Below, piece after piece: positions 1,380 through 62,769 of a stretch of DNA of 64,000 bases. Below the pieces are notes generated by a model. That model ran no database searches, had not been told where the DNA came from, and saw only the letters and a program-made list of their open reading frames with translations. The translations under genes and the position numbers were made by a program. Origin of the DNA: Thecamonas trahens ATCC 50062 (lineage: Eukaryota > Protista > Apusomonadida); contig NW_013657678.1 in assembly GCF_000142905.1 (NCBI RefSeq), positions 496,001-560,000 on the forward strand, in the 5' to 3' direction. Numbering within the stretch: position 1 is the first letter of the stretch; each line of letters begins with the position of its first letter.

Positions 1380-1405
1380 TGCGGGGGCGGGCTTTGGCTT
1401 TACGC

Positions 1406-7639: not shown

Positions 7640-8500
7640 GGTGAGGGAGTGAAACGGTGCGTGACGGGGTGACTCGCCCTGCATTCGTCCGTTGCCAGTT
7701 GCCAACAAGCTCGACGAGTAGCCAGCAATTGATGGGAAGGAATAATTGAATCTGGTGTGTATTGCTTTTGCCGTATTGGCAAAGATGGACAAAGTTAGAG
7801 TAGAAAGACGCCGCTGACCTTGCTAGTGCTGGTTGGGGAGGGGGAGGGCACGGCAAGCGGTTACTAGATGCATGCGTATACTGCAGAGAAGATCGGCCGT
7901 CGTGTTTCTGCCAAATGCGCCTTCTGGGTCGTCGGTTGCTCGCCGAGTCAGTGCCGGTCGGCCGCCACTCGTCGACTCGCTGGCTGCATCTCCGGCAGGC
8001 GAGCAGCCAAGTTGAAACTGGGTATAGGATTGGGAATGCGATCGCTACCAGTGGACTGATGTTATCATCGTGCCTTGCGTACTACAGATCACGTCGAAAA
8101 TCCACTGAAATTGTCGCTGGTTGTCGCTGGTGGCTCTTGGGAGGGCTGGCGGTGGTGTAGGTGAGCGGTGAGCTGCCCTGCTCACGGAAGCATATGAGCA
8201 TCTTTTGGTCCGATGGAGCCAGACCTGCAGTGAAATGGCGGATGATTAGTATGTTAGTATGTGCAGGCTGCAGGAAACGGAAGGATATAGTCGTATGAAA
8301 GCTTGTGGCGGTATGTAGCTTCGATGACGGGTATCTGCGGTGGTAGCGGCATCGAACGGGTTGTGTCATTTTTCGGGGTTGGGAGACGAAGCTTGCGCTC
8401 GGCACGCTTGAGTTGCAAACTTGCAAGGACACGTCGCGCACGTGAGTGTGGAGGAAGCAAGTAGCGGGTGAGTCTGCAGAAAATCTCATTCTCTGCTGCA

Positions 8501-25578: not shown

Positions 25579-25809
25579 TTGAAAGAGTTGCCAACTATTC
25601 GATCAACAAACACATCAACCTGTCCGCCATCCACACCAAGACCTGCCCGCCCCCCTGCCGTACATGTCAGGTCACCGCATCAATGGGCAAGTCACGCCGT
25701 TTCTTCCACCACCGGTTGGCCATAAAACTTGCAAATGCGACAGAATGCCACACCACTGAACGCACCCCCCCCTCCCCCCCCCCCCCTCTCTTTCCCCACC
25801 TCGCCCTCT

Positions 25810-28800
25810 ATGGCGGCAACTAAGCGGCTTTGTGCAGCCGAGGTGGAAGCGGTCGTACTTGTAGAAGAGGTTAATCACTTGTATATGCCCCCGTTTGTAG
25901 CCTGTGAACAGGAGAGTCATTCCAGCACGTGTGGTGGTGGTGGTGGTGGTGGTGGTGGTCAGGTTGGCCTCGATCATGGCAGAGACGACGACGACACGCT
26001 TGTGCCACCCTCCACCTCCTCCAAGCCCACCACACCCACGCTCACCACTAGCAATCCTCTCCTGTCTTCTCCCTTTACAACCTCGGAAAACTTGTTTGGT
26101 TTCACTCGTCACCCACATGCTTGCATCCTCGCACGGGCATGGTACAACAAGTGGCGCAACTCGGTCAGCTCGGCTCTCTTTGCTCCAAACTCACATCTGG
26201 CCGCTTCGTTGCCTCCAGAGTTGATGGCAAGAGCAAAGAGAGTCTTTCGCTCAGAGGCCGAGCTCGCTGCGGCAGAGGCCTCATCCTCTGCTGCTGCTGC
26301 TGCGGTTGCCGCACCTGCGCACTCGGCTGCAAAGCTCCGATCTTCGACGGCGTCGTCCTCTTCGTCTGCAGCGGCAGAGCTTGGTCTTGCTCCGGGCCCC
26401 GGGCCGATCTCCAACAAGATGCTTCTTGATCCCAAGGCCGAGTTCAAGGCCATCAAGGCCCTGCCGGCAGGCTCAGCCATCACCGACTTTGTGGTCGTCA
26501 TCTCGGCCGAGATCTGGGAGCTGCTCGCCAACACATACGGCGGTGGACCAAAGATTGTCCAGCTCATTTCGCCCGACCACAAGCTCAACGTATTTGCCGT
26601 CAATCCGGTGGTTACCGAGCCTTGGAGCTCTTCCGCTACTCCATGTGACACTCTCGCCGAGTCAACTGCCGCCGACGCCGAACCTGCCGAGGGACCGTCG
26701 ATTGCGCTCCGCGTGGCATCGATCCTCGGCACCACTGGATCAGCACTCGAGGCGTCGCTCGTGGCCTTTGTCCAGCCGCGAACCATGCTCCTCACCACCT
26801 TTTTGGGTTTTATTGTCTCGCACTTCTTCCCGGACATAGCCTTTGACTTTTCGGCGCTACAGCAGTTTGAGACAACTGCCGAGGCGCTCGACGCTCTGGC
26901 CGCTGGAGCGCCGCCAGGCTTTGTTGCCTACCGGTTCCCCGAGTCGTTTACTGGCGTCGACGATGTCTCCGACCTCTCACCGGCGTCTCTCGCAGACGTC
27001 GTCGACCAGCTCGCGCCTGATGGCGGCGCGAGCGGTAATGCCTTTGCCTCCCTCACCCTCGACGCGCTCTGCAGCGACGGCGACTATGTTGTTCTCCGAG
27101 CCTCGGCGCCGCAGCTCCCAGTCACCGTCATCACTACCATCATGACTGAGCTCCTCGCGCCTGTCCAGCGCACGCTAGCCGCCATCGAGAGTCTCAAGGA
27201 CGCCCCCACCCGGCATGCGGCTATGGACGAGCTGGCCCAGCTCTGGGCGTCGACGGTCGAGGCCGAAGCGCAGCACAGCAGCCGTGCCGAGGCAGTGACG
27301 CCGACGTCGTCGGGCCTCTCTACCCCGACCGCAGCTGGCCGTAAGACCTCACTTGTTGTGGACCTCAACCAGCTCGCCACGCAGCTTGCGCCCGTCTCCG
27401 ACTCGCCGCCGCCTGCGCCGCTCGAGATCACCGCGCCCAACTCGGTTGAGTGCATCCAAAAGTCGATTGTCTTTGGCCTTCTCCTCGCCTCGTCGAACAC
27501 CCACTGGACGCCTGCGCTCGAGCACAAGTTTACCCAGGCCTCGGCTTCGTACGCGCTCATCAAGTTCATTGACCTCTTCCGCACCACGCCCTCGTTCGCC
27601 GGCGCGTTCTCTGCCACACTACAGCCGCCAAATCTTCGCCACCTGCACTGGTTCCTCTCGTCGCCGGCTATCGACGTCCGCCAGATCGCACTCATCTTTG
27701 TCGAGGTGGTCTCGCGGCGCGTGGCCTCTTTCCGCTACCTCGGCCAGTACGTCCCGGTTGTCTACAAAGACCTTGTTCTTGCCTTTCTCGCCGACGCCTC
27801 GTCCGGCGCCGGTGCCATCCTCCACCAGGCCACCATCAGCCGCCTCGCCGCCGCCATGCCCGACGCCAAGTGGGGCCAGCTGTACTCGTCAATGGTGACC
27901 CCCGGCGTCAACCTGCTCGATCCTCTTGGCATTTTTGAGCGTTCGCCGCTCCATACCCAGACTGCTGTACCACCGGATCAGATGCTCCTCGCGGACGAGG
28001 CGCAGTCTGCGCTTGAACCGGCAAAGCCCGCGACGGCGTTTGCTACTCTCGACGCGCCGCACACGGTTCGCACGCTCCGCTTTATCCACGTCAACACCGA
28101 CTGGACGTCGGTCAAGAATGATGGCACGACGCCGGGCCTTGCGCCCAGCCCGCGTCTCGACGGACCTGAGGCGCGAAGCCGGACCCGCGCCATGACCACC
28201 TCGGGATCCAACTGGTTCTCTGCTGCCGAAAACGTCTCACGCGAGCAGCAGGCTGCAGTAGTGACCGACTACATTGCGCTGCTCGACAAGCCGGCTGTGC
28301 CATCCAGCAGTGCCAGCAGCGATGTGGCCCATTCGCCGTCGCGATCGTTGGCCTCTGTCTTTCTCCCACCGACTGATGAAGGAGATGGCCTCACCAAGCC
28401 CAAGCTCGAGGCTTCGGCCGTGGCCGACCTTGCCGACGCGGTTCTCGCCGAGTTTGACCTCGACCACTTTGGGCCCGACGGCGAGGTCCCCAGCTCGGAC
28501 CACCCTATCATGCCGTTTCTGGCCTCGGTCTACACTCGGCAGTGGCAGCTTGTCGGGCGTGTGCGGAAGCGAGCCGCTGTGGTCCAAGCCCAGCTCGACG
28601 AGGTGGCTATGGCGAAATCGAACCGAGCAAAACTCCTCGACAGCGTCGGCCCTGGCGAGAGCCTCCCACCTCGGGCTGCAACCAAGGTGAAGCAACTCGA
28701 ACGCAAGATCAAGATCCGACAGAACAAGCTGTTGAAGGCCGAGGGAGCGCTCGAAGAGACACGGACCGAGCTGGAGGCTGTGTCCTGGCAGACGCAGCTG

Positions 28801-31800
28801 CTGCAGCTCATTGGGCTCATGTACGCGCTTGTCCATGAGAACAAGCGCGACGACGACGACTCGTCGATCCAGGCCGAGCACGACAAGTGGCGCGCTGCGC
28901 TGTTCAAGCTGGCGTCATCGGTGGTTGAGGCCGCCACTTACGTCGGCATGGTCGGGCTCATGAAGGCCGGCAAGTCGTCGACCATCTCGGGCTTGGTCGG
29001 GGTTGACGTCTGCCCGTCACGGGCGTCGGCCATGACCGTCATCCCCACGGTCATTACTCATGTCCAAGGCAAGGCCGTCCCGACGCTCACCCTCCCACCC
29101 GGCACAGTCAAGGCACTCAACAAGTCGCTTGACATGATCCGCCACGCACTGAGCCACCGGGCCGAGGCAACGCGGGCAGTAGCGCTGGGCCACACCGGCC
29201 TGGAGCTGGTCCTTGACTCGGCACCGGAGCTTGTGTTTGACTCGGAGCCAGTGGCCGGCGTCGACAACGTGCTCTCGCGCTTGGTGCTGGCCAACGACAC
29301 TCTGCGGCTGGTTGAGATGCTCGACGTCGACGGGCCCAACCCGCTCGAGTCGATTGCCGACCTCGCTGACTTGCCGCTCATCGAGCTCGAGTTTGCGGTC
29401 ATGGCCCAGACCGGCATGTTTGGCCGGCTGTCGTTCATCGACTCGCCAGGCCCGAACGAGTTTGGTATGGACATGCTGTCGGACGTGCTGCGGCGGACGC
29501 TGCGGCAGGCCTCCATCATTGCTATTGTTCTCAACTACGCCTCGCTCCAGTCTTCGGCGCAGGCCAACATCAACTCGATCATCTCGGACATCACCGCCGA
29601 TTTGCAGCAGGAGATCTACGTGTTTGTCAACAAGTTTGACCAGCGCAACATCCGGTCTGGCGACATGGACGAGGACGAAGTCAAGGCTTTTGTCGCTCAA
29701 AACCTGTTTGGCACGCCCAAGTTGCAGCCTGGTCCGAGCTCGCCGGCGAGCGGATCCGGCGAGACCGGCTCTGGCACGCCAGGTGCTGCGGCTGCTGCTA
29801 CGGCTCCCTCCGGCGCCACACCTCCTGCGTCACCACCGGGGGCACAAAGCCACATTCCGCGGATCAAGCCGCAGAACGTGTTTGCGGTCTCGGCCAAGTA
29901 CGCGCAGTACGCCAACACGGCACGGCAGTACCTGTCGTCGTTTGCGCTTGCGGCAGCCGAGGCAGCCGAAGCAGCCGAGGCGAGTCGGGCGGCCAGTTCG
30001 GAGGCTGGCGAGCTGTTGCCGTCGGCTACCGGAAGCGCGACCGGTGACGAGAGCGGGAGCGACTCGGACTCGATCCAGATCTCGTCGGATGACGACGGGT
30101 CCGACCTAGCCGAGCTGGGGAGCGAGGTTGGGAGTGGTGTGGGCGATGACGGATCGTGTTGTGGCTCGTCGTCGTCGGAAGACCTCGGGTTGGTCGAGGT
30201 GCCATCGCCAGACGTGTACCCATGGGTCAAGGACTTTGCGCGGATTGCTTGGGGCGAGACGTGGACGGACGACGTGGTGTATCCGAAGATGGTGGAGGAA
30301 AACGATATTGGGTCGTTCCAGGAGGGCGTGGAGGCTGTGTGGCACAACTCGCGGCTCAACGAGCCGCTCGAGTCCATGCTCCGGCATTGCTACACCAACG
30401 CCGGCATCATCTCGTTGCGGCAAGCGCTGGTCGAGATGTCGCTGGTGTGCAAGGCGTTTGTTCAGGATGTACATGTGCAGCTCTCAACGGTGGCAGCGTC
30501 TGTGGAGAACCTTGAGTCTTTTCTCGTCACTTCGGCCACAACGCTCGAGGTCATCCGCGAAGCAGTCAACGAGATCAAGCACTTTGCGTACTCGCAGGCG
30601 TCTGCGCGGCTACCGTCACTCATTGCCGACGCCATCTCGGTGACGTCGCTCTCGCTGATGACCGATCCTGCGCAGATTCTGGATCTTGTGGATGCTGAGC
30701 TGGCGTCGCCGGACCGTGTACCCGGCACGCTCGAGGCCAAGGTGGTGCGGGCCAGGTTTGAAGCCATCTTTGATTCTCGCAAGCGTGCGCGGACGTCGGC
30801 CGGCTCTGTGCCCGACAATGTCAAGTTTGCGTCGCAGGAGCAGGCAAGCGAGTTTGTTGACTTTATGACGCACGTCTTCAAAGTGGCGTCTCTCAACATC
30901 CAGTCTGCATTGGTCTCCAAGCTTCTTTCGGGCGCGCGCGGCATCATTTCCGAGATCGAGGCCAAGGTCAAGGAGGTACTCGAGCCGCACCTGCTGGCGT
31001 ACCAGAACGACGTGCAAAAGGTGCTTGAGCTCTCGATTGTGTTCCCTGAGCTTGAGACGCCCGAGCTCGAGTCGTTCGCCCACGACATCCAGACGCACAC
31101 GCTGCGGACGCTGGACAAGTCGTCGACGCGCAAGTTTGCGGTCTTTGGCTGTTCAAATACATCCCGGTACCGTCTCTCCGCAAGTCGTCTGCGTACGAGG
31201 TGTCTGGGCGAGTGATCAAGGACGCGTTTGAGGCTGGCTTGCAGCGGGTAGCCGAGGCGACGATGGACTCGGCCGAGTCGATGTCGGAGATGTTCCAGGC
31301 CAAGGTCGATGAGTACGGATCGCGTGTGGAGCGCGAGCTGTACCGGTTGATGTATCGCATCAAGCAGACGGTCGACAATAAGCGGTCAGCACACGACCAC
31401 TCTGTCATTGTGCAACAGTCGTGCGAGGAGATGCTGTGGAAGTACAACCAGCTGGTGACTCGCCGAAAGACGCTGCTGCAGGCGCTGGAGGCCCGACTGC
31501 TGGCTACCGGGTCGTTTTCGGCCATTCAGGGCGAGGGTGGTGCCGGGCGGGCCGACGTTGGAGCCGCGGTACCGTCGTCGTCGGTCCTCTCGCCCAAGTC
31601 GTTTGAGCCGTCCGAGTCGGTCATTGCGCTGCAGCTGTTCGAGGAGATTGCCGTGGGCGTTCCGCATGGAGCAGGTGACGGCGATGGAGCAGGCGCCGAC
31701 GCGCTGGGCACAAGCAAGAGCAGCGGCGCGCAGCCAAGCCAGGCGCCGTTGATGGTGACGCCGGCGTCGGCGCTAGCGAGCGTCGAGCCAGTCCAAGTGC

Positions 31801-32630
31801 TCGAACCGCTGGGTGACTCGATTCTCGGTGTGCTGTACCATGGCTTGTACCGCGGCGCCAAGGTTGCCGTCCGCAAGGTGGCGGCGGAGAGCCCAGTCGA
31901 GCACGCGGCGGCAGTGAGCAGTGCCAGTGGCCTCTGCACCGTGGCAAACTCGTCGCTGGTTCCGGTGCTCGGCTACTCTGAGACGTGCCCAACCGCGGTG
32001 TATGTGGTGTACGAGTTTTCGCATGCCTCGCCGCTCTCGGTCCTCATCCGAAAGGAGGGCGGCCTACTCGACGAGATGGATGAGCGGGTCTCGATTCTGC
32101 ATGACGTGGTGTGCGCGGTTGCAGCGCTGCACAAGGCCGGGCGAGTGCACGCCAATCTCAACCTGGGCAACGTTCTTGTCCAGCGGTCGCGGCGGGGTCA
32201 GGTGACTGGCGCATACCTGACATCGAGCGCTGTACTGGTGCCGACCAAGCTCGACGCGTTTGAGCGGCAAGTCATGCGTGGCAAGCACATGTACTACCCA
32301 CCAGAAATCCTCGCGACATGGATGAGCGGCGAGAGTGTCGAGGCCACGGCATGGACTCAAGCAGCGGACGTTTACGCGCTCGGAGTCCTCGCTTATGAGC
32401 TCTTTACCGGTATTGCGCTGGCGGAGCATGCGCAGCACTTTACGCCCGAGGCGCTGGTGGCCGGAACCCGGCCGATGTTCCCGCAGGGCTTTGTCGATGA
32501 TCATCCAGGAGTGGGTGACCTTGTAGAGGCCTGCTGGGACGCCGACGCCGCAAAGCGGCCTGACTGCACCTCGGCACTGCAGCTGCTCAAGACCATGCAG
32601 TTTACGGTTGCGTTTGATCGGGTGTTTTAA
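25810..32630 (+). CDS. DUSP(-UBL)-helical-CrfC/YjdA-type dynamin-like GTPase-pseudokinase, paralog A, ~2273 aa; 1-nt frameshift at 31144-31146
   Basis: DUSP (WYNKW...PGPISN...WELLANTYGGGP). G1 GLMKAGKSS, G3 DSPGPNE, G4 NKFD. One added T gives KFAVFWLFKYIPVP, matching paralog B, and joins ORF 31200-32630 (kinase fold). Confidence 0.85.
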
Positions 32631-33124: not shown

Positions 33125-36100
33125 TCAGAAGAGGTTGGTGAGCTCGGCTAGATTTGTGTCGGAGAGGAAGGCGACAGAAGCCATGAGAACACCGCCGATG
33201 ACCTTGAGTGGCTCAAAGAAGAGAATGTCGGCAACAAGGGTGTAGAAGAAGGTGCGGAGCCATGAGTGAACAACCGGACGCGAGAACTTGAGGCCGTAGA
33301 CGATGACCAGGAGCGAGCAGCCGGCCGAGACGACGACCAGGATGACAAAGACCAGCCAACCGAACCAACCCGCGAGCTTGCCATGGCGCATGGCTTCCTC
33401 CTCCGCGGCAAGCTTGTAGTGGCGAAGGGCGACGACGCTGAGGAACTCTTCAAACTCAATGGCGCCGCTGGCGTCGGTGTCGATGACCTTGAATATGTTT
33501 TCGAGCTCTTTGGGTTCAACGATCCAGCCGCGGTGAGACATGATTACGGCGACTTCGCTGCGGTCGAGCGAGCCGTTGCCATCGAGGTCCATGCGGGCAA
33601 AATCCGAGGCGGCGAGGTTAAGGACGTTGCGCGGGAGGGCCGCAATCATCTCGTCGACGGTTGGCTTGTACGCCTTGCGGCAGAGGCAGCCACAGCGACG
33701 GGGGCCCTTGCGCTGAGCGAGCTTGGTAGCGCCGTCGTCTGACTCGGACGAGAACGACGAGCCAGCGAGGCGCTTGCGGGCAACGCCAGAGGCGACCGGG
33801 ATCCCGCGATCGCTGCCAATCGAGGATGAAAAGTCGTAGCGATTCTTGCGGACGGCCTCGGTGGTCATGAGCAAGGCGTCTGCTAGCGCGTCGTGGACGT
33901 CACGGGCTGAAAGCGAAGACGATGACGATGAGGCTGACGTGCTGGTCGAGGCCGACGACGACGAGAAACTGCCTTCCTCCTGCTCCGAGACGCTCGACGA
34001 CGACGAGGCGCGAGATTCCGAGAGCGAGAGACTCTCTGTGAAGCGGTCGGGCATGAGCGAGACGTTGTCGAACGAGTGGTGATCGCCGCCACGGCCGATG
34101 GCGTCTGCCGGCGAGGCACTCGGATTCATCCACAGCCAATGGCGCTCGCGCGGGAGGAGGCCATAGACGGTACCGGCCGAGGACTTGCGCATGAGGATGG
34201 CGGCGAGGGTGAGCGGGCCAAAGAGAACCGGCCCGATGATGACCGAGACGACGAGCTCTGTGATTCGGCCGCGGGTGCCCGAGACCGAGTCGTCGTCCTG
34301 GTCGCGGTAGAAAGCGGCAGCGACGGCCATGCCTGCAGTGAGGGTGGTGAGGAGAACGGCAGCACGGAAGACACGAGTGAAGGGATCGTCCTCGAGCTTG
34401 AGGGCCAGTGACAGCCAGAGGTGCTTGTGGACCATCGACTCTTTGAGCGTGTGCCAAAGCAGGTGCTTCTTGCCTCTGATCTTGGCGCGTTTGGCACGGA
34501 GGAAGGCCGAGAGCTTGCCGGTTCGGTCGACAAGGAGCAGCTCGCGGTCACGGATGTCGTACATGTAGAGGAACGGGAGCGCGATGAGGAAGGCGGCCCA
34601 GAGTATGACGACGACGATGAGGGCCTCGGGCTGGTCCTCGACGCTGCCGAGGCGGGCAAAGTCCGAGGCATCGAGAGTGTTGACGGCAAACGTGGTGAGA
34701 TGGTTGCAGACGCACTCTGCGTGGGAGCCGCGGACGACGGTGCCGACCTGGCACCCGGTGGTGTTCCATCCGCCCAAGGCGTCGCTCCAAAAGACGCAGG
34801 CATCTGCGCCGAGCTCTGCGCCGCTGAGCGGGATGACGATGCGGATGGGATCCGGGGCGCGGTCGACAGCAAGTTTGCCCTGAACAGCTGGGAGCGCGGC
34901 GCCGAGCGAGAGTGCAGACGCCGGGGTGGTGGCATAATCGAGCGAAATGACAGCGGCCGAGAGGGCGTCAAAGGCAACGGTGCCGTTGGGGTCGCCGACA
35001 CGGCGGCCGCCGTTAAAGGCGTACGGGTTGGAGGAAAAGGCGAGGCACTTTTCGCGGACCGAGGTGCTTGCGTCGATGCCTGTCGAGGTGAGGGCGGCGA
35101 TGGGGTGGCGACAGCGGAGCAGGCCTCGACCACGGTGACAGCGGCCTGTGGATCGCGGGTCGGCTTGCTGGCGGCGATATTAGCGACAGCAAACTGCTGA
35201 ACCTCGAGGCGAAACATCGAGTTGGAAGCGACAAGCGGGGCCATGCCGTCGACGGCGTCGGCCATGAGGGCGTCAGTCACGTCGGAGAGGAGAGCAAAAG
35301 CGGTCGCTGTGGCGGATCCGTCCGAGGAGGAGCCAGCGGCGCCGTCGGCGCGGATGATGGCAGCAAGGGCGGTCGAGACCGACGAGGCCTGGGCCTCGGA
35401 TACGCGCTTACCAACGAGGCCGGCGACGAGCTGCTGGACCATGGCAGTGGCGCGGATGGTGAGTGCTGGTGACACCTCGGCAGGCGTGCCGAGGACAAGC
35501 GAGAGAAGGGAAGCGGTCTGCGCGAGTTCGCCGACGGTGCTGTTGGTGACTCGCGAGACCGAGGAAAGGACGTTGAACAGACGGAGGCGCGAGGTCTGCG
35601 CAACCGGATCAACGGTGGCGCCCGGGGTGGGCGGCGGTCCGTTGAGGACTGCCGAGATGGAGGAGATGAGCTGGCGCGCCTGGTGGGTGTTGCCGAGGGC
35701 GATGGCGTCGGCGAGGATGCCGTCGATGAGCGAGGCAGCGGCGGCGCCTGGTGAGCCTGAGGCGACAGGGAAGGGGCGGACGCGGAGAGTGAGGCGGACG
35801 GGCGGGGCAGCACCGAAGCGGTCGTCGGAGACAATGCCGATGACCGAGACCCGAAAGTCATCTGCGGCGAGGCCAGCCTGCAGGTAGACCGAGTGCGAGG
35901 TTCCGATGGACGAGGGCACCAGGTCGACGCGGTCGCCAGAGGGAAGCTCTTGTTGGATGGCGTAGAGGACGGTGTCGTCGTCTGCGTCTGTCCAGCCTGC
36001 AAAGGTAAATGTGACGAGGGTGGCGGCGGTAGCATCGGACGAGACGTTAGTGGTGAAAGTGCCGCCTGCGGGGACAGCGTTGAGGAGTACACGCTGCGAG

Positions 36101-39084
36101 GCGATGAAAAAGTAGGGAGAGATGGCGCGGGTGCCGACAACCGTAGCCGAGCCGCGAAAGGTGGCGTGCGGGTAGGCGGCACGCCAGGCAGCATCGACAG
36201 AGCGCGAAGTGATGCGCGTTCCAGGGCTAGCACGGGCAAAGGTGCCCGACTCGCGGATGACACGGACGTAGAGACGAAAGTCGTAGTCGATCTCGGTCCG
36301 CATGCGATTTGCGCGGATGCCAAAGTTGCGCATGGTGGCTGTCGTGGTGGCGAGGGTGTCGTTGTCGGGATGGAGGTCGATGCGGCTCGCTGACTCATCC
36401 CAGAGGAACTCGAGGGTGTCGTCGGCGAGCTCGGGCAGGACCTCGGAGAGAAAGATGATGACTTCGTTGACGTTGGGCACGAGGTCGTCGTCACGCCAGA
36501 CGGCGCGGGTGCTGACAAACGGCAGGTTTGCGCGGGTGACGACGGCGGTAGTGGTTGCGGAGCGGGCACCTTGAGCAACGCGGAGAGTAATAGTCATGTC
36601 GGAGCCGAGGGGAGCGGTGAGCAAGGCAACCGGGATGGAGAGCAAAGGACTTGACCAATCAACCGAAGACGGTGCGGAGACGCACGCGCTTCCGCCTGCA
36701 GAGCACGACCACGTGTAGGTGAGGCCGCCAGCGACGGCGTCTGGATCGTAGGAAGCGGAGCCGTCAAGGTCAAGGTTAGCATTGGAGAGGATGGTCCGTG
36801 CTGCACCGCCCTTAATGTGGGCAACGAGCTGCGAGAAGCGGACCGAGACCGAGACGGTGTCAACTGACGACTTGGCAACAGCGAGGGCAGTGGTGGAGAC
36901 GTTGACCTTGAAGACGTGAGTCGATCCCGGCGGGAGCGATCCCGGTGGAAGGAGAAGGACATTGCGGGCTGGGTCAGCGACACCAGTCGCGAACGGATCG
37001 ACTGGCCCGGAGAGAGTGGACCAGGAGATGGCGACTGGGGTTGTGGCATCCGAAGGGCATGCGGCAAAGGCGACCGAGACGTCGACGGCGAGCGGAGTGC
37101 GCGAGGTTATGGCCAGGGATTTGGCGGAGAGGGCGATGAGCGGCGTGCCTGGATCCTTGACAACGGTTGTCTGTGCAGAGGACGAAACGCCGAGCCAGTC
37201 GGTTACGTTGACCTCAAAGACGTACGGCGTGGCAGTCGGCCAACCACCGACATCAATTGAGATACGCGAGGCAGGAAAGGCGGCATCGAGGGCGGCCGAG
37301 ACGACGAGGTCGACGGGCGAGACGAGGCGAAACGTAGTCTGGGTGCGGATGCCCGACGAGGTGGTGGCATCGATAGCGATGGTGCCACACGAGTCGACGG
37401 TTGGTGGCGCGATGAGGTTAGCAACGGGCTGGGCCGAGTTGGGGGCGGCCTGAAGTACGACACCGGTGGCGGCGCGGGTGGCGGCGTCGAGAACAGGAGC
37501 GGCGAAGAGGAGCATGTTGCCCGGAACGGCGGTCGGTGACGCGCCGAGGACGACGGTGAGTTTGGAGGGCGTGGCCCAGGTGCAAGCAGCCGAGGATCCG
37601 AGGATTGCGGCGTTGGAGAAGAGCGAGGAGCAGACAATGTCGGGTGAAGCGAGCGAGGCGCCAGCCAAGTTGGTGGGGCGATCCCAGGTGACGCTGACAG
37701 TGGTTCCGGTGCGCGAGAAAATGGCAGTAGGGGTGGGGTCCGGCGGCGGCGGCGGCGACGGCGGTGGCGACGGCGGCGGCGGAGGTGGCGACGGAGGCGG
37801 AGGAGGCGATGGCGGCGGCGGAGGAGGCGACGGTGGTGGAGGCGGCGGTGGCGGCGGGGGTGGCGACGGCGGCGATGGCGGCGGTGGCGGTGCGGGCGGC
37901 GACGGACAGGCCGAAATGGCGACGACCGGGGTGGTAAAGCTGTCGGCAAACGAGGTGTAGACCTTTGGCGGAGAGACGGTTGTGTCGACGTCGACGTTAG
38001 CGTAGGCTGTACCAGAGTTGGCCTCGACCAGTTCGTCGGTGCAGGAAAAGTCGACCGTGGAGCAGCGGGAGAGCCAGAGGAAGCCCGACGCGCCCTCGTT
38101 GATATACGAGACATAGAAGACGAGGTCAGCGGCATTGAGAGCGATGTTGACGTTGGAGACGGCGTTGTTTGTGGGCGAGATGTCGTAGCCGGTGCAAGAA
38201 GAAATGTTCATGTCACATACGACGACGCGGGCCTTGGACTCGGCTGAGCGAGTGTCAGTGGTGGCGACGTAGACGAGGCGACCGACCTCATCGATGGCGA
38301 TAGACGGCTCAATGCCTGACTCGTCGACGGCGCCGCCCGAGGCGTTGTGGATGGAGCACGCGCTCAGGTCGTCATTGCACTTGAAGACAAAGGCCCTGTT
38401 AGTGACGGCAAAGTTGTTCTGCACAGCGATGTAGACGGTCGAGGTGACAGAGTCATAGGCGATGGACGGCGCCAGGCCCGAGTTGATGCCCTGTGAGGCG
38501 AGCGTTGAAACGTCTACGGTGAGGTCGCACGATTGACCACCGTTGATACAGCGGTGGACATGCAGGTGGTTGCTGTTGTACTGGGCCGGGGAGGCAACAA
38601 AGACGCGGTTGTTAGCAGGATCAGCAACAACCGCCGGCCGTTTTGCCGCCTGAGCAAAGGGCTCGATCTGGACCGCGTAGCACGAAGTAAAGTTGAACGA
38701 GCACGAGAAGAGGTACATCGAGTTTGAGAAGATAACGTGTTCCATGGCGATGTAGTACCTGCCTGCAACAGGATCGATTTCGATGTGGGGATGTGTACAG
38801 GCGTCTGTCTGGGCGTCTTGAAGATGAGAGACACAGTCTGTACCGTCCTTGTTACACCTGTACACATACAGCACACTAGAGGCATCAACATGGCATGCAG
38901 CGGTAAAGAGGTAATCATCACCAGCTGCCACTCGCGACATGGGCGTTGCCCCGCATGCACCAGTCTGATCAGCTGCAACAGAGACCGAAGAAGAAGAACA
39001 CTGCCCGAGCGAAAGAGGCACGAGGCTGGCCAGCACAAGGACAATTGGTACCACGGCCATGTAGAGGAGGGGGCGTGCCCACAT
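33125..39084 (-). CDS. polycystin-1-like receptor: signal peptide, Cys-rich propeller-like repeats, Ser-Pro linker, REJ, GAIN/GPS, 5 TM with cytoplasmic EF-hand pair; ~1986 aa; 1-nt frameshift at 35102-35105
   Basis: REJ (LVAHIKGG...LDGSASYDPD...YTWSC; NAVPAGGTF...FAGWTD). GPS CVFW...WNTTGC...CVCNHLTTF. PC1 motifs HLWLS, FTRVFR, YGLKF, WL...EPLK. EF loops DLDGNGSLDRSE and DTDASGAIEFEE. Confidence 0.85.
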
Positions 39085-56682: not shown

Positions 56683-59600
56683 TCATCGGATAACCATGGT
56701 CCGGACAACAGTGTCCAGATCAACGGCAGTCGGCCGGTCGGCCGGCGACGGGGCAAGGCAGGTGGCAATCATGCTTGCCACCTCGGGGTGGCCGATCTTG
56801 CCGAGATCGACCGCCCACGCGGGGCCCCACACCAGGCGCTGTGCAGAGGCATACGCCGAGTGGAAGCCGAGGCCGGAAAAGAGCTGGTACAGGATCATGC
56901 CCATGGCGTAGACATCGCTCTCGTTGGTGTACCGCAGCTCCTCCTCCTCAAGCCCGTCGTTGACCCACTTGTCCAGGAGCTCCGGTGCGAGGTAGAGGGC
57001 GCGGAGAACCTCGCGCTCCGACCGCAGCGGGAGCTGCTTGGCCTTGCGCTCGATTGCCGCAAGCGGCGGCGTCGCCGCCTGGTACGCATCCGAGAACCGG
57101 GTCACCGACACTCCACCATCGATGAGGAGCTGCACGCTTGCCGGATCGCTGCTCGGAACAAGGACCGAGTGTGCATCGAGGAACTCGCAGCGGACGTTGT
57201 GCTGGTGGGCATGATCGAGCGCCTGGACGAGCCGGCGCGCCATGGCGAGCTTGGTCGTCAGCGGCAGGTCGGCAATGGCCGGCGCAGGCTGCAGGTCCGC
57301 TCGGTCGAGGAGCTTGCCGAGGCTTGCGCCTTCAATCTTGCGGCTCACGAGCGCAATGCCGCCCTTGACGAGCGTCACGCCCATAAGCGGGACAATGGCG
57401 GCGTGCGAGAGCGCCCACACGGCCTCGAGCTTGACCAGCAGGAGACGCAGCGCTCGCTCGGTGCAGAGCGCAATCTTGCGCGAGGCCACCGGGACGCCAC
57501 GGTACTCGCCCGACACAATCGGGCCCCACGCCGAGCGCGCGAGGTCCGGGCCCGACATGTCAACCAGCTCTGGCTTGAGGTAGAATTGCAGGTCTTGCAC
57601 CGAGGCCACCACTCGCGGGGGAGCGGACGCATCGGCGACGCCGAAAACACTCCGTTGCGGATAACAACCGACGACTCGGACGCACATGTTGCACTCGAGA
57701 ACCGTGTCGACGCCGGCGAGCCGTCGTCGGCGCCGCTGACCGCAAGAAGCGAGGTGAGGGGGAGGAGCGGCGCGTCGATGACCACGTCCGAGTACTCGAA
57801 CGACCGCGGAAAGAGGACTGAAGTCCGCGGGAGGCTGCTGAGCGAGCGGCCTCCGGGAGGCGCGCTTTCGTCATCAAGCCGCGACGCCATGGCTGCCAGC
57901 ACAGACCCGGCCCGCCGCCGGAACTCTTGCGTCCGCCACAGCAGCTCCTCGCACTCGACCTGCATGAGAACCGACTGGTCATGCCGCGACCGCTTGTTCT
58001 CGATCGAGAGCCGGATGCGGGCAATGAGCTTGTTGAGCTCGCGCTCAACCTTGCCGGTGTAGTTGTTCACCGCCGTCGAGACCATCTGCGACGAGAGCGA
58101 CGACGAGGCCTGGAGCGTCGACTCGAAGACCTGCGCGAGGCCTTCGGAAAAGGCCGACTTGATGAGCGCAGGGTCCACTGCGTATGTGCATGTCTTGGAC
58201 CGCTCGACCCGCGGAATCGGAATAAATTTGAAGAGCCAGAACAGCGCCCACTTGGTTGTTGTCTGCTGCTCGACCAGCCGCAGCGTGTCGCTCTTGATGA
58301 GCGAGCCAAACACGTTGAGATCAGGCGCTTCGATGTGCGGAAACTCGATTGAGGTTCCTAGAATCTCGTCGAGGTCACGCTGGTACTGAGCCAGATGCGG
58401 CTGAAGCCGGTCCTGCACCATTCGGCCCATGTTCTCGTTCACACCCTGGACGGCCTCGACTATGTGGCCAATGAGGAAGGTTTGCAGCGACGCTGCCGCC
58501 TTTTCAAACAGCGCCGTGAGCTTGGCAATGATGCCATCGGCTTGGGCCTGACCCTCAAACGGCACCGGTTCGTTGGCGAGGAGCACAGCCTCGAGAGAGG
58601 CCATCGACGGAAACGCCGACTCGGCAGCGGCCACAGACGCCGACGGCGAGACCGGCGGCGAGTTTGGTGGCGACGGCGAGGTCAGCCCGGCCTTGGCGTT
58701 CGTTAGCTCTGGCCCATACGTGTCCAGCAGCTCGCGAAGGCCTCCAGGCGAGGTCATTTCCTTGACCCGGGTCCGGGCGTCGTCGAGCACTTGCTGGATG
58801 ATGGCCGGGAGGTGCTCCAGCGCACGGGTCGCGGCGTGGTCCTTGATGTCGCGGATGGCCGAGAGAATGTCTTCGTGAGCCGAGGCTGAGACCTCGAGGA
58901 ACTTCTCAAGCGAGACGACCGACGAGGCGACGGCGGCGAGGTGCATGGTGACGTCGCGCTCGAGCTTGGAAGCGATTGCAGACGCACGCATGAGCGAAGT
59001 CCGCAGCGAGATGACGCCGGCGTTGGTGTAGCAGTGGCGCAGCATCGAGTCAAGCGGCTCGTTGAGGTGCGAGTTGCGCCACACAGCGTCGATACCTTGC
59101 ATGAACGTCCGCACATCGTTGTTGGCGAGCATGCGCGGATAGACCTCGTCGTCGGCCCATGTCTCACCCCACGCAATGCGTGCAAAGTCCTCGACCCACG
59201 GGTAGACGTCTGGGTCAGGCACCGAGATGTGGTTGTCGAGATTGAACTCACGCTCGAGCCACGAGACGTTGTCCGACGCGCCGGCCTGCTCGCCGTCGGC
59301 GGCGTCCGAGCCGTGGCTTCCACCACCGCTCGGCGGTCCGCCCACCGACTCGGAGTCTGAGCTCGAGTCGAGGTCTGAGATGTCGATCGAGTCCGAGTCG
59401 GAGCCGTCGCCATCTCCATCGCCGCCGCTGCCGCCTTGACCATCACCGGAGCGGCTGGCACGATCCGACGATGCACCGTTGGCCGCCGCCGAAGCTGACG
59501 ACGAGCATGTTGACCCCGAAAGCGGCGGCGGTGATGCCGACTCGGGCTGGGCCTGTGTGAGAATGTGATGGCGGGCAGTGTTGGCGTACTGCGCAAACTT

Positions 59601-62360
59601 GGCAGAGACCGGGAAAATGTTCTCGGGCCGGAGCGAGATCCCTGAGCGGACGTCGGCGAGGTTGGCCATGATAAAGTCGCGGACTTGGGCCTCGTCCATG
59701 TCACCGGATGCAGTGTTCCGTTGGTCAAACTTGTTGACAAAGACGTAGGCCTCCTGGTCGACGTCGGCGGTGGCCTCGGCAATGGTGGCGTTGATGGCAA
59801 CTTGCTCCTCCGAGTTGAGGGCGGCGTAGTTGAGGACAACGGCGACGATGGAGGCCTGCTTGAGAATGCGCTTGACGACGTCGGAGAGAATGTCCATGCC
59901 CTCCTCGTTGGGCCCGGGCGAGTCGATGAACGAGAGGCGGCCAAACATGCCGGTCTCGGCCATGACTGCAAACTCGAGCTCGACTTGCGGGAGATCCCGG
60001 AGCTCGGTGATGTGAAGCAGCGGGTTGGCACCATCGATGTGAACGTACTCGCAGAGTCGAATTACGTCGTTGAGGGCAACAAGAGTGGTGTGGATAGCGT
60101 CGAGGCCGACAACAGGCGTGGGCGTAAAGTGAAGCTGCCCATTGACAACCATGTGGACAATGTCGTCGACAACCCTGTTGCCGAAAAACGAGGTCGTCTC
60201 GTCCTCGTAGGTTGCGGAAAAGTGGGCGGCGAGGGTGACGACGGTTGTGTTGAGGACGAGACAGGTCGACTCGGGAATGACGAGCGTGGGGAGCTTCTTG
60301 CCCTCAACATGTGTGATGAGCGTCGGAATGACGGTCATGGCCGTCGATCGCGAAGGGCAGACATCGAGGCCGACGAGACCTGAGATGGTTGACGACTTGC
60401 CAGCCTTCATGAGGCCGACCATGCCGACGTAGGTAGTGGCCGAGACGACGTCGCGGACAAGTCCCTCGAGCTCACCGGCCCACTGCGTATACTCGCCGAG
60501 GACCTCGAGCGAGGCCTCGCCGACCGAGTCGACGACAGCCGACGAGGCCGAGACAAGGGTGTCGACGAGGGCAATGAGGGCAATGACCTCGCGCTGCCAC
60601 TCGACCGACTCGAGCTCGGCACGCATTTCAGCAGCCTCGGCGGCGGCAGCCTCGCGCTTGGCTGATGCAGCCTTGAGCTTGCGAGCAAGCTGCCTTCGCG
60701 GCGCCGAGTCTGCCGCGATCTGAGCCTCGAGCCTGGATGCCGCGTCCGAATGGCGAGTCAGCCGCGCGTTGACCTCCGCCAGTCGTGCGAGCAGCTTGCC
60801 GCGCCGCGACTCGACGCCGGCAAGCTCCGGGAACGACGGATGGTCTTGGCCCTGATGCGGGAGTGCGTGCGGACGAAGGACCGGCGGCGCACCACTCTCG
60901 AGCTGCGCGAGGAGCGCCGAGAGGATGCGCTCAGCGGTCGGGGCCGTGGGCGCGGCGAGGAGCGCGGCGAGTGCGGGCGAGCCAGCCACGTGGGCAAGCG
61001 TCGCTGGGTCAAAGCCGTGGCCCTGGGTGACAAACAGTTCCTTGCGTCGCGAGGAGCGGACATCGGCCTGCTGGCCACCAACGTCACCAGCACGGAGCGC
61101 ACGGAGTGCGCGGAGACGGCCGGAAAAGTAGGTGATGAGGACGTCGCGGACAGCACGCGGGAGGACAGCCGGGAATGAGGCGAGCGACGGGCAGCGAAGG
61201 ACGACGAGCTCGATGAAAAGCAGGGTCAGATCGCGGATAATCGGATTCGACGAGCCGAGGTGGTCGTCGAACCGGCGGAGGTGCGGCGGCATGACGGCGG
61301 CGTCAAATTCGACCGCAAAGTCATTGAGAGTGAGTAGGCCGAGTAGGTGACCGAGGGCGCGAAGAACGGTCGGCTCGTCGAGGGCGTCTTCAAGCGACGG
61401 CCGCCAGACCTTGTTTGCAGCGGCGAGAAGGAGGCCAAATATGATCGGCTTTCGCGAGCACTGCAGCGCCTGTGAGTCTTGCGAGCGGGTCCATAGGCCG
61501 GCGAGGGCATCGATGGCGTCGAGAGCGTTAGGCGCGGCGCGGAGGTCGTCGATGGCGGCAATAGTGGCGTCAACCATGGCGAGCTTGGACGACATGAGCT
61601 CGAGAACAAGGTCCGTTGTCACGTCCCCACTCGCAGCAACAATGAGGATCTGGTCGTCTTGCGCCGCAGCGAGCAAGAGGCCATCGCCAGCAAGGCACAG
61701 CTCTGCGGCGTGGTGCGAGTGGTAGTCAAAGACCCAGGCTGCGAGCGGAACCTCACCCTGTGCCACAAACAGGTCCTCGGCCAGGAGGCAAAAGTGGCTG
61801 AGCGTGGTCGCAGCGTCGACAACAAGAGTCACGAGGCGGGCAGATGCGGGCGAGTCGACGACACAGACGTGAAAGGCGACAAGATGGCCGGATGCTTCGA
61901 GCGGAAGCACGTCATCGGCAAACAGATGCTTGCGAAGATACTTTGGCCCGCCACCGTAGCGCTCAACAAGTCTCTCCCAAACAGCCTCCGGCACAAACAC
62001 GCCATTGAGGTCCGAGATGGCGTTGGCGCGAGGCGATGACGACGACGACGAGGCTGGGAGCGAGGAGGGAGAGATCAACGATGAAGATGACGACGGCGAT
62101 GATGTGGGACGAGAGGGCGAAGAGAGGGCCGACGAGGGAAGCAGGTGATGCTTGGAAGAGGTGGCGACCAACAGTGGTGCCAGCAGAGGGGTGTTGTTGA
62201 TTGGCGGCGGAGTGGGGCCGCCCGACACCACATGCTTGTGCCACGCGAGGAACCAGTTGAACGAGAGGAGGCAGAGTGAGCTGTGCTCGACCTCGACGTT
62301 GCCTGCCGACTCGACAGATGACGCCACTGCCAGGCAGGCCGCCACTTCCTCGTTGTCCAT
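56683..62360 (-). CDS. DUSP(-UBL)-helical-CrfC/YjdA-type dynamin-like GTPase-pseudokinase, paralog B, ~1892 aa; 1-nt frameshift probably at 57644-57647
   Basis: DUSP (WFLAWHKHV...PPPINN...VPEAVWERLVERYGGGP); YVGMVGLMKAGKSSTISGLVG identical to paralog A; kinase fold in ORF 56683-57687. Confidence 0.85.
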
Positions 62361-62508: not shown

Positions 62509-62589
62509 GAGCAGGTGGCCGAGTGGTTAAGGCGCTGTGTTCAGGTCGCAGTATCTTCGGATGCGCAGGTTCGAGTCCTGTCCTGCTCA
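62509..62589 (+). tRNA. tRNA-Leu(CAG)
   Basis: Acceptor GAGCAGG/CCTGCTC, D arm TGGCCGAGTGGTTAAGGC, anticodon loop TTCAGGT, long variable arm, GGTTCGAGTCC, downstream oligo-T. Confidence 0.96.
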
Positions 62590-62688: not shown

Positions 62689-62769
62689 GAGCAGGTGGCC
62701 GAGTGGTTAAGGCGCTGTGTTCAGGTCGCAGTATCTTCGGATGCGCAGGTTCGAGTCCTGTCCTGCTCA
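62689..62769 (+). tRNA. tRNA-Leu(CAG), identical second copy
   Basis: Same 81 nt, 180 bp downstream, followed by a T-run Pol III terminator. Confidence 0.96.

What the first reader, a model, noticed from the sequence alone, without database searches (positions are those of the whole stretch)
56683..62360. Second, diverged paralog of the DUSP-dynamin-pseudokinase 24 kb away in convergent orientation
Seen: same domain order. GTPase blocks are near-identical to paralog A (ELEFAVMA.TGMFGRLSFIDSPGPNE; PDVYPWV.DFARIAWGETW; SMLRHCYTNAG.ISLR), while the DUSP, linker and kinase parts are strongly diverged. Inference: an old duplication with a constrained GTPase and fast-evolving regulatory modules. 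Bacterial DLPs often work as hetero-pairs (DynA halves, DLP1/DLP2), so A and B may hetero-oligomerise. Two copies also argue that the fusion is not an assembly chimera.
Basis: partly seen in the sequence, partly recalled or inferred. Interest (0 to 1): 0.8.

Follow-up and report, generated by a model that had tools for sequence, protein, structure and literature searches.

The report
Second DUSP-dynamin-pseudokinase gene in Thecamonas
The marine protist Thecamonas trahens really does carry a second large gene that joins a DUSP domain, a bacterial-type (CrfC-like) dynamin GTPase and a dead kinase. It is one of four old sister genes kept under selection; the idea that it pairs physically with copy A remains untested.

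Summary
Observation confirmed. Window 56683-62360 (-) encodes about 1,890 aa with the order DUSP, helical region, coiled coil, CrfC-type dynamin-like GTPase plus stalk, kinase-like domain. This matches copy A (25810-32630, +), whose 3' end lies 24 kb away in convergent orientation.

The genome is Thecamonas trahens ATCC 50062. B is the NCBI model 'TKL protein kinase'.

- **Family size:** there are four paralogs, not two. C and D lie on contig C57. C has an intact kinase and no DUSP; D has a DUSP and no kinase.
- **Age:** A and B each have their own ortholog in one Tara Oceans metagenome, so the duplication is old.
- **Selection on B:** B is not decaying. NG86 dN/dS is 0.12 for the GTPase, 0.11 for the DUSP and at most about 0.5 for the kinase-like part.
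- **Pseudokinase:** A, B and their orthologs lack the HRD aspartate and a proper DFG motif.
- **Frame breaks:** each of A and B has a frame break that looks like a 1-nt shortfall. B's is placed at a C5 run by ortholog comparison; A's sits at a T3 run. The NCBI 35-nt 'intron' in B is probably a patch.
- **Fusion:** it is real. C (GTPase to kinase) and the B ortholog (all three domains) are single ORFs.
- **Hetero-pairing of A and B:** unsupported. CrfC is the stated exception among paired bacterial DLPs, and the genes are not adjacent.

The scan had already found this family on other DNA of this genome.

The parts
56683..62360 (-). Paralog B, whole gene (NCBI model P0003, 'TKL protein kinase', 1880 aa)
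61929..62273 (-). DUSP domain (USP-type, PF06337), aa 30-144, interrupted by a Ser/Pro-rich insert
   Evidence: 36.1 bits, cut-off 29.3; 72% identical to the Tara ortholog, dN/dS 0.11
61635..61838 (-). Possible ubiquitin-like beta-grasp after the DUSP (aa 175-242); low confidence
   Evidence: AF2 secondary structure strand-helix-strand-strand-strand, pLDDT 55-67; no Pfam hit
60891..61616 (-). Helical region, weakly armadillo/HEAT-like (aa 249-490)
   Evidence: AF2 pLDDT about 60-87 over most of the region; Foldseek best hits are armadillo repeats at E about 0.02, not significant
60444..60833 (-). Long helices / coiled coil preceding the GTPase (aa 510-639)
   Evidence: conserved in all paralogs
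59550..60452 (-). CrfC-type dynamin-like G domain (aa 637-937): G1 G654-K655-S656, G2 T676, G3 D813-G816, G4 N876-D879
   Evidence: NF007368, E 3.5e-50; these columns invariant or at least 90% conserved in 83 sequences; pLDDT above 90
59274..59522 (-). Disordered Ser/Asp/Gly-rich insert (aa 947-1029) holding a conserved S-I-x-I-S plus acidic-run motif (aa 991-995, nt 59376-59390)
   Evidence: pLDDT below 50; motif shared by A, B, both Tara orthologs and, at another site, D
57882..59273 (-). Helical stalk (aa 1030-1493) homologous along its length to the C-terminal half of bacterial CrfC-like proteins
58212..58238 (-). Conserved aromatic/hydrophobic segment WLFKFIPIP (aa 1375-1383) in a low-confidence stretch between stalk helices; candidate membrane- or partner-contact element (inference)
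   Evidence: pLDDT below 50 at model residues 731-752
57617..57621 (-). C5 run where the reading frame most likely changes by 1 nt
   Evidence: the Tara ortholog reads through with the same 26-aa spacing
57593..57627 (-). 35-nt 'intron' implied by the NCBI model (it joins ...SASPM to HLQFY...), probably an annotation patch over the frame break
56716..57543 (-). Kinase-like domain, predicted pseudokinase (VASR in place of VAIK, CEFLDAHS in place of HRDLKxxN, DGG in place of DFG)
25810..32630 (+). Paralog A (same architecture), frame break at T3 run 31144-31146

Best explanation
Paralog B is a functional, selectively maintained gene of Thecamonas trahens. It is one of four ancient paralogs built around a bacterial CrfC/RdcA-type dynamin-like GTPase with its helical stalk.

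Shown here:
- All G motifs are intact.
- The predicted fold is BDLP/SynDLP/IniA-like.
- The G domain, stalk and DUSP are under clear purifying selection.
- The kinase-like domain has lost the catalytic residues in both the A and B lineages, yet is retained across species.

Inferred: the core is a GTP-driven, self-assembling mechanochemical or switch module. The N-terminal DUSP, possible UBL and helical repeats recruit partners. The C-terminal pseudokinase acts as an allosteric or scaffolding regulator, not as an enzyme. The conserved WLFKFIPIP segment in the stalk is a candidate contact surface for membrane or a partner.

The four paralogs form a natural series and most likely have divided functions: A and B have DUSP plus pseudokinase, C has an active-looking kinase and no DUSP, and D has a DUSP and no kinase. 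The single frame break in B is most likely a 1-nt homopolymer error in the assembly.
For: - **Domains:**
- **CrfC model:** E 3.5e-50 for B and 1.4e-53 for C.
- **Exhaustive HMMER:** after the family's own members, the hits are about 800-aa proteins aligned over profile positions 10-750. These match NCBIfam CrfC end to end.
- **Structure:** AF2 model pLDDT 81.5, pTM 0.75. Foldseek hits SynDLP at 2.4e-11, BDLP at 1.2e-10 and IniA at 2.6e-08.
- **G motifs:** G1-G4 columns are invariant or nearly invariant in 83 sequences.
- **Copy number:** four paralogs.
- **Orthologs and selection:** tree; rates. GC3 of the piece downstream of the break is 0.83.
- **Kinase motifs:**
- **Frame break:** the same 26-aa spacing in the read-through ortholog.
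Against: - No expression, biochemical or localisation data are available here.
- dS is saturated (about 1-2), so dN/dS for the slower-conserved parts (kinase-like 0.5, helical 0.65) is only an upper bound.
- The frame break could be a real, very recent mutation in this strain.
- The closest characterised relative, E. coli RdcA/CrfC, is described as a soluble regulator, so membrane work is not implied by homology (PMC6510439).
- The N-terminal model is of low confidence (pLDDT 61).
Confidence: 0.6

Rival explanations
1. A and B form an obligate heterotypic dynamin pair, like Cj-DLP1/DLP2 or the two halves of DynA.
For: Both types are co-retained in T. trahens and in one Tara sample. The G-domain blocks are near-identical between paralogs, so heterotypic G-dimers are sterically plausible.
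Against: [quoted passage not shown] RdcA/CrfC homo-oligomerises and instead partners with the non-DLP RdcB/YjcZ (PMC6510439). There are four paralogs, so an exclusive A:B pair is arbitrary. About 10 unrelated genes lie between A and B: a REJ/GPS polycystin-like gene, a Rif1_N gene, an ArfGAP-PH gene and others. No co-expression or interface data exist.
Confidence: 0.15
2. B works as a soluble GTP-gated signalling switch like E. coli RdcA. Nucleotide state would control oligomerisation and docking onto a target, with no membrane remodelling, and the pseudokinase and DUSP would be the output or adaptor modules.
For: The closest characterised sequence relative is RdcA/CrfC. It is described as a soluble protein whose GTPase cycle gates activation of DgcE (PMC6510439). 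Fusion to signalling-type domains (kinase, DUSP) fits a regulatory role.
Against: No RdcB/YjcZ partner is found in the genome, while the E. coli control is positive. The conserved aromatic WLFKFIPIP segment lies in a low-confidence stretch between stalk helices and could be a membrane contact. The sampled bacterial relatives sit next to patatin lipases, which hints at membrane-directed activity.
Confidence: 0.25
3. B is a decaying duplicate (pseudogene) whose frameshift is real.
For: A 1-nt frame break separates the GTPase-stalk part from the kinase-like part. The NCBI model needs an implausibly short 35-nt intron to bridge it.
Against: There are no stops in 1581 plus 310 codons on either side of the break. 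The downstream piece has GC3 0.83 and 43% identity to the ortholog, without frame damage. The break maps to a homopolymer, and A shows the same kind of break, yet the sequence just downstream of A's break is 84% identical to its ortholog with dN/dS 0.2. At least two other same-strand pairs of long ORFs in this window overlap in different frames; for one of them a Pfam GPS domain begins at profile position 14 at residue 2 of the downstream ORF. This pattern suits assembly indels or short introns.
Confidence: 0.05
4. The family is an innate-immunity or stress module of the protist. It would be analogous to Mx/GBP large GTPases or to bacterial defence-island dynamins, with rapidly changing sensor modules.
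For: The family has expanded to four copies with shuffled accessory domains. The helical and kinase-like parts evolve faster than the core. Two sampled bacterial relatives lie beside patatin, WYL, integrase and RadC genes. Others carry TerB or TerD domains.
Against: There is no PADLOC hit for the B or C cores, or for P0008. No dN/dS value exceeds 1 anywhere. The orthologs are one-to-one and stable, not rapidly turning over.
Confidence: 0.1

Closest known systems
E. coli CrfC / RdcA (YjdA), NCBIfam NF007368, and the about 800-aa bacterial CrfC-like DLPs
   Same: The G domain and the whole helical C-terminal half are homologous (E 3.5e-50; profile positions 10-750 align to about 800-aa proteins that match NF007368 end to end). 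G1-G4 are conserved, including the G2 threonine that PMC6510439 shows to be essential in RdcA.
   Different: This is a eukaryotic nuclear gene of about 1,890 aa. It carries about 640 aa of N-terminal DUSP, helical and coiled-coil modules, a disordered acidic insert and a C-terminal pseudokinase. It scores 171 bits against the 1146-bit equivalog cut-off. The genome has no YjcZ/RdcB partner. The family forms its own clade on a long branch.
Structurally solved bacterial DLPs: Nostoc BDLP (2J69), SynDLP (7ZW6), IniA (6J72), Cj-DLP1/2 (5OWV)
   Same: The predicted fold is the same: a G domain followed by long helical bundles (Foldseek E 2.4e-11 to 1e-06).
   Different: Sequence identity is only about 10%, and TM-scores are low (about 0.28) because the domain arrangement differs. 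There is no sequence-level PDB hit. Those proteins have no accessory DUSP or kinase domains.
DUSP-UBL modules of ubiquitin-specific proteases (USP4/USP11/USP15 type; from general knowledge)
   Same: A Pfam DUSP above the cut-off sits at the N-terminus and is followed by a possible beta-grasp.
   Different: Pfam finds no USP/UCH catalytic domain anywhere in the protein. The DUSP is split by a low-complexity insert. The UBL is only a low-confidence prediction.
ROCO proteins such as LRRK2 (a GTPase and a kinase on one chain; from general knowledge)
   Same: A large multidomain protein joins a GTPase to a TKL-like kinase or pseudokinase, with repeat domains at the N-terminus.
   Different: The GTPase here is dynamin-like, not Roc-COR; Pfam reports no Roc or COR at E <= 0.01. 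The domain order and evolutionary origin are unrelated, so this is an analogy only.

Membership tests
Dynamin superfamily (bacterial-type DLP) | G domain with G1 GxxxxGKS, G2 T, G3 DxxG, G4 NKxD | tested here: met
   G654-K655-S656, T676, D813-G816, N876-D879; these columns are invariant or at least 90% conserved in 83 sequences. Dynamin_N scores 28.7 bits against a cut-off of 27.
Dynamin superfamily (bacterial-type DLP) | Helical neck/trunk (stalk) following the G domain | tested here: met
   AF2 model pLDDT 81.5 with long helices. Foldseek hits SynDLP, BDLP, IniA, OPA1 and Cj-DLP at E 1e-11 to 1e-06.
Dynamin superfamily (bacterial-type DLP) | Assembly-stimulated GTP hydrolysis and membrane binding | not testable with these tools
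   Needs purified protein and liposomes. The only candidate contact element is the conserved WLFKFIPIP segment.
CrfC/RdcA equivalog (NF007368) | Whole-protein score above the curated cut-off (1146 bits) | tested here: not met
   171 bits for B and 182 bits for C. It is a homolog, not an equivalog.
CrfC/RdcA equivalog (NF007368) | Partner protein RdcB/YjcZ (PF13990) encoded alongside | tested here: not met
   No PF13990 match in the whole genome, with a positive E. coli control. The bacterial relative P0008 does have a YjcZ gene immediately downstream.
DUSP domain proteins (PF06337) | Pfam DUSP above the gathering score | tested here: met
   36.1 bits against 29.3 for B and 32.4 for A. Not found in C.
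Ubiquitin-specific proteases | USP/UCH catalytic domain | tested here: not met
   No UCH family among the Pfam hits at E <= 0.01.
Active eukaryotic protein kinases | Beta-3 Lys (VAIK), HRD catalytic Asp, DFG Asp | tested here: not met
   B has VASR, CEFLDAHS and DGG. The B-ortholog has VAVK, ASVLTPRH and DGG. A has VAVR and HANLNLGN, with no DFG. C has all three canonical motifs. The kinase fold itself is detected (PK_Tyr_Ser-Thr 39.1 bits against 23.1). The result is a predicted pseudokinase.
Heterotypic DLP pairs (Cj-DLP1/2, DynA, DynA/DynB) | Two DLP genes adjacent in one operon or fused in one chain | tested here: not met
   A and B are 24 kb apart and convergent, with about 10 unrelated genes between them.
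Heterotypic DLP pairs (Cj-DLP1/2, DynA, DynA/DynB) | Physical heterotypic complex | not testable with these tools
   No multimer prediction or interaction data are available.
Known anti-phage defence dynamins (PADLOC LeoA/LeoBC) | Match to a PADLOC model | tested here: not met
   No hit for the B or C cores.

The most novel reading that the evidence does not exclude
The four paralogs act together as one heterotypic machine confined to apusomonad-like protists. The active kinase of C would control the pseudokinase-bearing A and B dynamin-like GTPases (and the kinase-less D) through kinase-pseudokinase pairing. The DUSP and the SIM-like acidic motif would tie GTP-driven assembly to ubiquitin or SUMO signalling. 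This would be a previously unknown eukaryotic use of a bacterial CrfC-type dynamin, possibly in membrane repair or defence.
Probability: 0.1. Interest if true: 0.8.

Novelty: new variant of a known kind. Interest (0 to 1): 0.45.

Why it matters
Dynamin-superfamily surveys of eukaryotes have concentrated on the classical classes. One recent exhaustive survey explicitly left out the BDLP/mitofusin side (PMC10280142). This locus shows a bacterial CrfC-type dynamin-like GTPase established in a eukaryote close to the animal-fungal lineage, expanded to four copies and fused to eukaryotic signalling domains. The copies differ by presence or absence of the DUSP and by an active, dead or missing kinase. 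They therefore offer a ready-made natural deletion series for asking how accessory domains regulate a dynamin-like core. For this particular finding the added value is narrower. It shows that copy B is real, old and maintained, that the fusion is genuine, and that the hetero-pair idea rests on an analogy that does not apply to this subfamily.

Tried and rejected
- **Segmental duplication.** I tested whether the C2 pair (A, B) and the C57 pair (C, D) arose by block duplication, because both pairs are convergent and about 25 kb apart. tblastx of the window against C57:52-118 kb matched only the four DLP genes. In the tree A, B and C form a near-trichotomy, with D deeper. Rejected.
- **A real 35-nt intron in B (the NCBI model).** Disfavoured, because the Tara ortholog reads through with identical spacing and is homologous on both sides of the break.
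- **An intron at A's break.** Impossible: the last codon of one frame and the first codon of the next share a base.
- **A DUSP exon upstream of C.** tblastn found none within 4.7 kb.
- **YjcZ/RdcB partner.** None in the genome.
- **PADLOC defence models.** No hit.
- **PDB by sequence.** Nothing relevant.
- **N-terminal structure.** Low-confidence model with no significant fold match.
- **ESM Atlas.** The machine was busy.
- **YN00 dN/dS.** Failed numerically in nearly all comparisons, so NG86 was used, with the saturation caveat.
- **Word-index search with the GTPase-stalk alone.** It found only one further family fragment and two weak hits.
- **Paper searches.** Searches for Thecamonas plus dynamin and for CrfC plus eukaryote found no description of this architecture.
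- **Sequencing platform of the assembly.** Could not be established.


Full report
**What is there.** The window is G000:C2:496001-560000 of a 28.7-Mb, 131-contig assembly. Names attached to identical proteins identify it as Thecamonas trahens ATCC 50062, an apusomonad.

On the minus strand, ORF 57375-62360 (1661 aa) is followed by ORF 56683-57687 (334 aa) in another frame. Pfam places a DUSP domain (the USP-type PF06337, not a phosphatase) at aa 30-144 and Dynamin_N at aa 646-876 of the first ORF. It places a protein-kinase fold in the second. Copy A (25729-31215 plus 31200-32630, +) has the same families in the same order.

The 3' ends are 24 kb apart and convergent.

**The frame breaks.** B's two frames differ by one base.

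- The Tara Oceans homolog P0002 is a single 2031-aa ORF.
- It is homologous to B's first frame up to ...RPLP and to B's second frame from there on.
- It has exactly 26 residues between that point and the conserved ARSAWG in both proteins.
- This places the break at the C5 run 57617-57621.

NCBI's model P0003 (1880 aa, 'TKL protein kinase') instead removes 35 nt (57593-57627) as an intron. I regard that as a patch.

A's break lies at the T3 run 31144-31146, inside the conserved FAVF|WLFKY motif. There the two frames share a base, so no intron can explain it. A's ortholog P0153 reads straight through. The 110 codons just downstream of A's break are 84% identical to that ortholog, with dN/dS 0.2.

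Both breaks therefore look like single-base homopolymer shortfalls in the assembly. I could not check reads or establish the sequencing platform. I kept the pieces apart in every analysis and did not join them.

**Family size and architecture.** A six-frame search of the whole genome with B's G domain finds four loci: A and B on C2, and C and D on contig C57.

| Paralog | Location | DUSP | Kinase | Source |
|---|---|---|---|---|
| A | window 25810-32630 (+) | yes | pseudokinase | |
| B | window 56683-62360 (-) | yes | pseudokinase | |
| C | L011:1723-7950, one 2075-aa ORF | none, and none within 4.7 kb upstream | strong Pkinase match (E 5e-43) with all catalytic motifs | |
| D | AMSG_10125 (P0004) | yes | none | |

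The C57 pair is also convergent and about 25 kb apart. However, tblastx shows that nothing else is shared between the two regions, so there is no evidence of a block duplication. Between A and B lie unrelated genes: a REJ/GPS polycystin-like gene, a Rif1_N gene, an ArfGAP-PH gene and others.

**What the GTPase is.**

- NCBIfam's CrfC model (E. coli YjdA/RdcA) matches B at E 3.5e-50 and C at 1.4e-53. These scores are far below the equivalog cut-off.
- An exhaustive HMMER search of 1.84 billion representatives was run with a C/B/D profile. It returns the family's own members first: B, D, the Tara proteins and a few Logan/ENA fragments.
- One Logan protein, P0007, also scores high. It has extra N-terminal GTPase-family matches and matches CrfC itself at 838 bits, so it is a bacterial-type CrfC and not a family member.
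- Scores then drop to about 800-aa proteins aligned over nearly the whole profile. These match the CrfC model end to end.
- In an IQ-TREE analysis the eukaryote-type sequences form one clade (SH-aLRT 100) on a long branch away from those proteins.
- An AF2 model of B aa 637-1493, built on 83 sequences, has pLDDT 81.5 and pTM 0.75. It shows a G domain, an 83-residue disordered acidic insert and long helical bundles.
- Foldseek's best PDB matches are SynDLP, BDLP, IniA, OPA1, Cj-DLP1/2 and the mitofusins.
- The G1-G4 columns are invariant or nearly invariant across the alignment.

The core is therefore a bona fide, apparently catalytically competent, bacterial-type dynamin-like GTPase of the CrfC branch.

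**Age and selection.** B groups with Tara protein P0002 (72% identity over the core), and A groups with Tara protein P0153 (78%). Both groupings have SH-aLRT 100. The two Tara scaffolds come from the same sample assembly and have similar GC content. So the A/B split predates the divergence of T. trahens from that organism, and both types are retained in it.

| Domain | B vs its ortholog | B vs A |
|---|---|---|
| DUSP | 72% | 31% |
| UBL-like | 40% | 27% |
| Helical | 44% | 32% |
| Coiled coil | 43% | 33% |
| GTPase | 77% | 59% |
| Post-G stalk | 76% | 52% |
| Distal stalk | 66% | 35% |
| Kinase-like | 44% | 27% |

NG86 dN/dS for B against its ortholog is 0.12 (GTPase), 0.11 (DUSP), 0.15-0.30 (stalk) and 0.5 (kinase-like). 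dS is about 1-2, so it is saturated and these ratios are upper bounds. A and its ortholog behave alike.

B is not evolving neutrally. The DUSP differs strongly between paralogs but is conserved within the B lineage, which fits early functional divergence better than continuing rapid change.

**Pseudokinase.** I aligned the domains against C, which has GxGxFxxV, VAIK, HRDLKAGN, DFG and PPE.

| Protein | VAIK position | Catalytic loop | DFG position |
|---|---|---|---|
| C | VAIK | HRDLKAGN | DFG |
| A | VAVR | HANLNLGN | none |
| A ortholog | VMVR | HGNLGSGN | none |
| B | VASR | CEFLDAHS | DGG |
| B ortholog | VAVK | ASVLTPRH | DGG |

Loss of the catalytic aspartate is shared by orthologs, so these are conserved pseudokinases and not recent wrecks.

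**How it probably works.**

- Shown: an intact G domain, a BDLP-like stalk, selection on the core, and a dead but conserved kinase fold.
- Inferred: GTP-dependent self-assembly of the dynamin-like core. Accessory modules would provide targeting (DUSP, a possible beta-grasp and weakly armadillo-like helices, both low confidence) and regulation (the pseudokinase).
- Candidate contact: a conserved aromatic segment WLFKFIPIP sits in a low-confidence stretch between stalk helices. It could contact membrane or a partner. This is a guess.
- Caveat on membrane work: the closest characterised relative, RdcA/CrfC, is reported as a soluble regulator whose GTPase cycle gates activation of a diguanylate cyclase together with RdcB/YjcZ (PMC6510439). 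Thecamonas has no YjcZ. Two bacterial relatives I inspected are followed by a patatin lipase; one of them also has a YjcZ-family gene in between.

**The hetero-pair idea.** [quoted passage not shown] That point, the existence of four paralogs and the lack of adjacency together make an exclusive A:B pair a weak inference. Some heterotypic contact among the four is not excluded, through G domains or through kinase-pseudokinase pairing with C. No tool here predicts complexes.

**Novelty.** The proteins are already deposited as uncharacterised predictions. The scan had already reported this family from paralog D elsewhere in this genome, with the same overall reading (s1-744714). I found no paper describing the architecture. 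It is a new variant of a known kind: a dynamin-superfamily protein with an undescribed domain combination. This finding adds confirmation, age, selection and a corrected gene model.

Noticed in passing
window 59376-59390 (-); A aa ~1448; D (P0004) aa ~824; P0002 aa ~1152; P0153 aa ~809: Inside the disordered acidic insert, a short motif S-I-x-I-S is flanked by Ser/Asp runs. It is conserved in A, B and both Tara orthologs, occurs at a different site in D, and is absent from C. It resembles a phospho-regulated SUMO-interaction motif or a CK2 site cluster (my reading, untested).
   Followed up: partly
window 62509-62589 and 62689-62769 (+); L011:1238-1312, 1331-1404 (+) and 7888-7962 (-): Two identical-type tRNA-Leu(CAG) genes lie about 150-400 bp upstream of B's start codon. 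Paralog C likewise has two tRNA-Ile(AAT) genes about 320-490 bp upstream, plus a third overlapping the tail of its ORF, so the last residues of the 2075-aa ORF are read-through of a tRNA gene.
   Followed up: partly
L020:6366-7966 and L019:7199-9232: Bacterial CrfC-like genes P0008 and P0033 are each followed by a roughly 310-330-aa gene and then a patatin phospholipase. The intervening gene is YjcZ-family next to P0008 and has no family hit next to P0033. WYL-regulator, phage-integrase and RadC genes lie nearby. This looks like a conserved three-gene module in island-like contexts, and it gave no PADLOC hit for P0008 or the two 310-330-aa neighbours.
   Followed up: partly
proteins P0043, P0110, P0033: Some bacterial CrfC-like dynamins carry N-terminal TerB or TerD (tellurite-resistance/stress) domains.
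   Followed up: no
window 33125-39084 (-): A polycystin-like gene (REJ domain, GPS motif, EF-hands) is split over two overlapping frames. The Pfam GPS match starts at profile position 14 at residue 2 of the downstream ORF. This is another frame break or short intron, in line with indel errors in this assembly.
   Followed up: no
L013:2-385 (-): On the Tara scaffold, the gene next to the B ortholog hits Pfam Imm51, a family of bacterial polymorphic-toxin immunity proteins. No counterpart is found in this window by tblastn.
   Followed up: partly
cluster of P0005/P0153: One member of the A-ortholog cluster (P0154, 151 aa) comes from a source labelled 'merc' with run id ERR1711916. If that catalogue is transcript-derived, it would be evidence of expression in nature. 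I could not verify what the source is.
   Followed up: no
window ~22.7-23.5 kb and ~53.95-54.05 kb: Runs of N (scaffold gaps) interrupt two neighbouring genes, a RhoGAP-like ORF and the ArfGAP-PH ORF. The assembly is therefore a gapped draft here.
   Followed up: no
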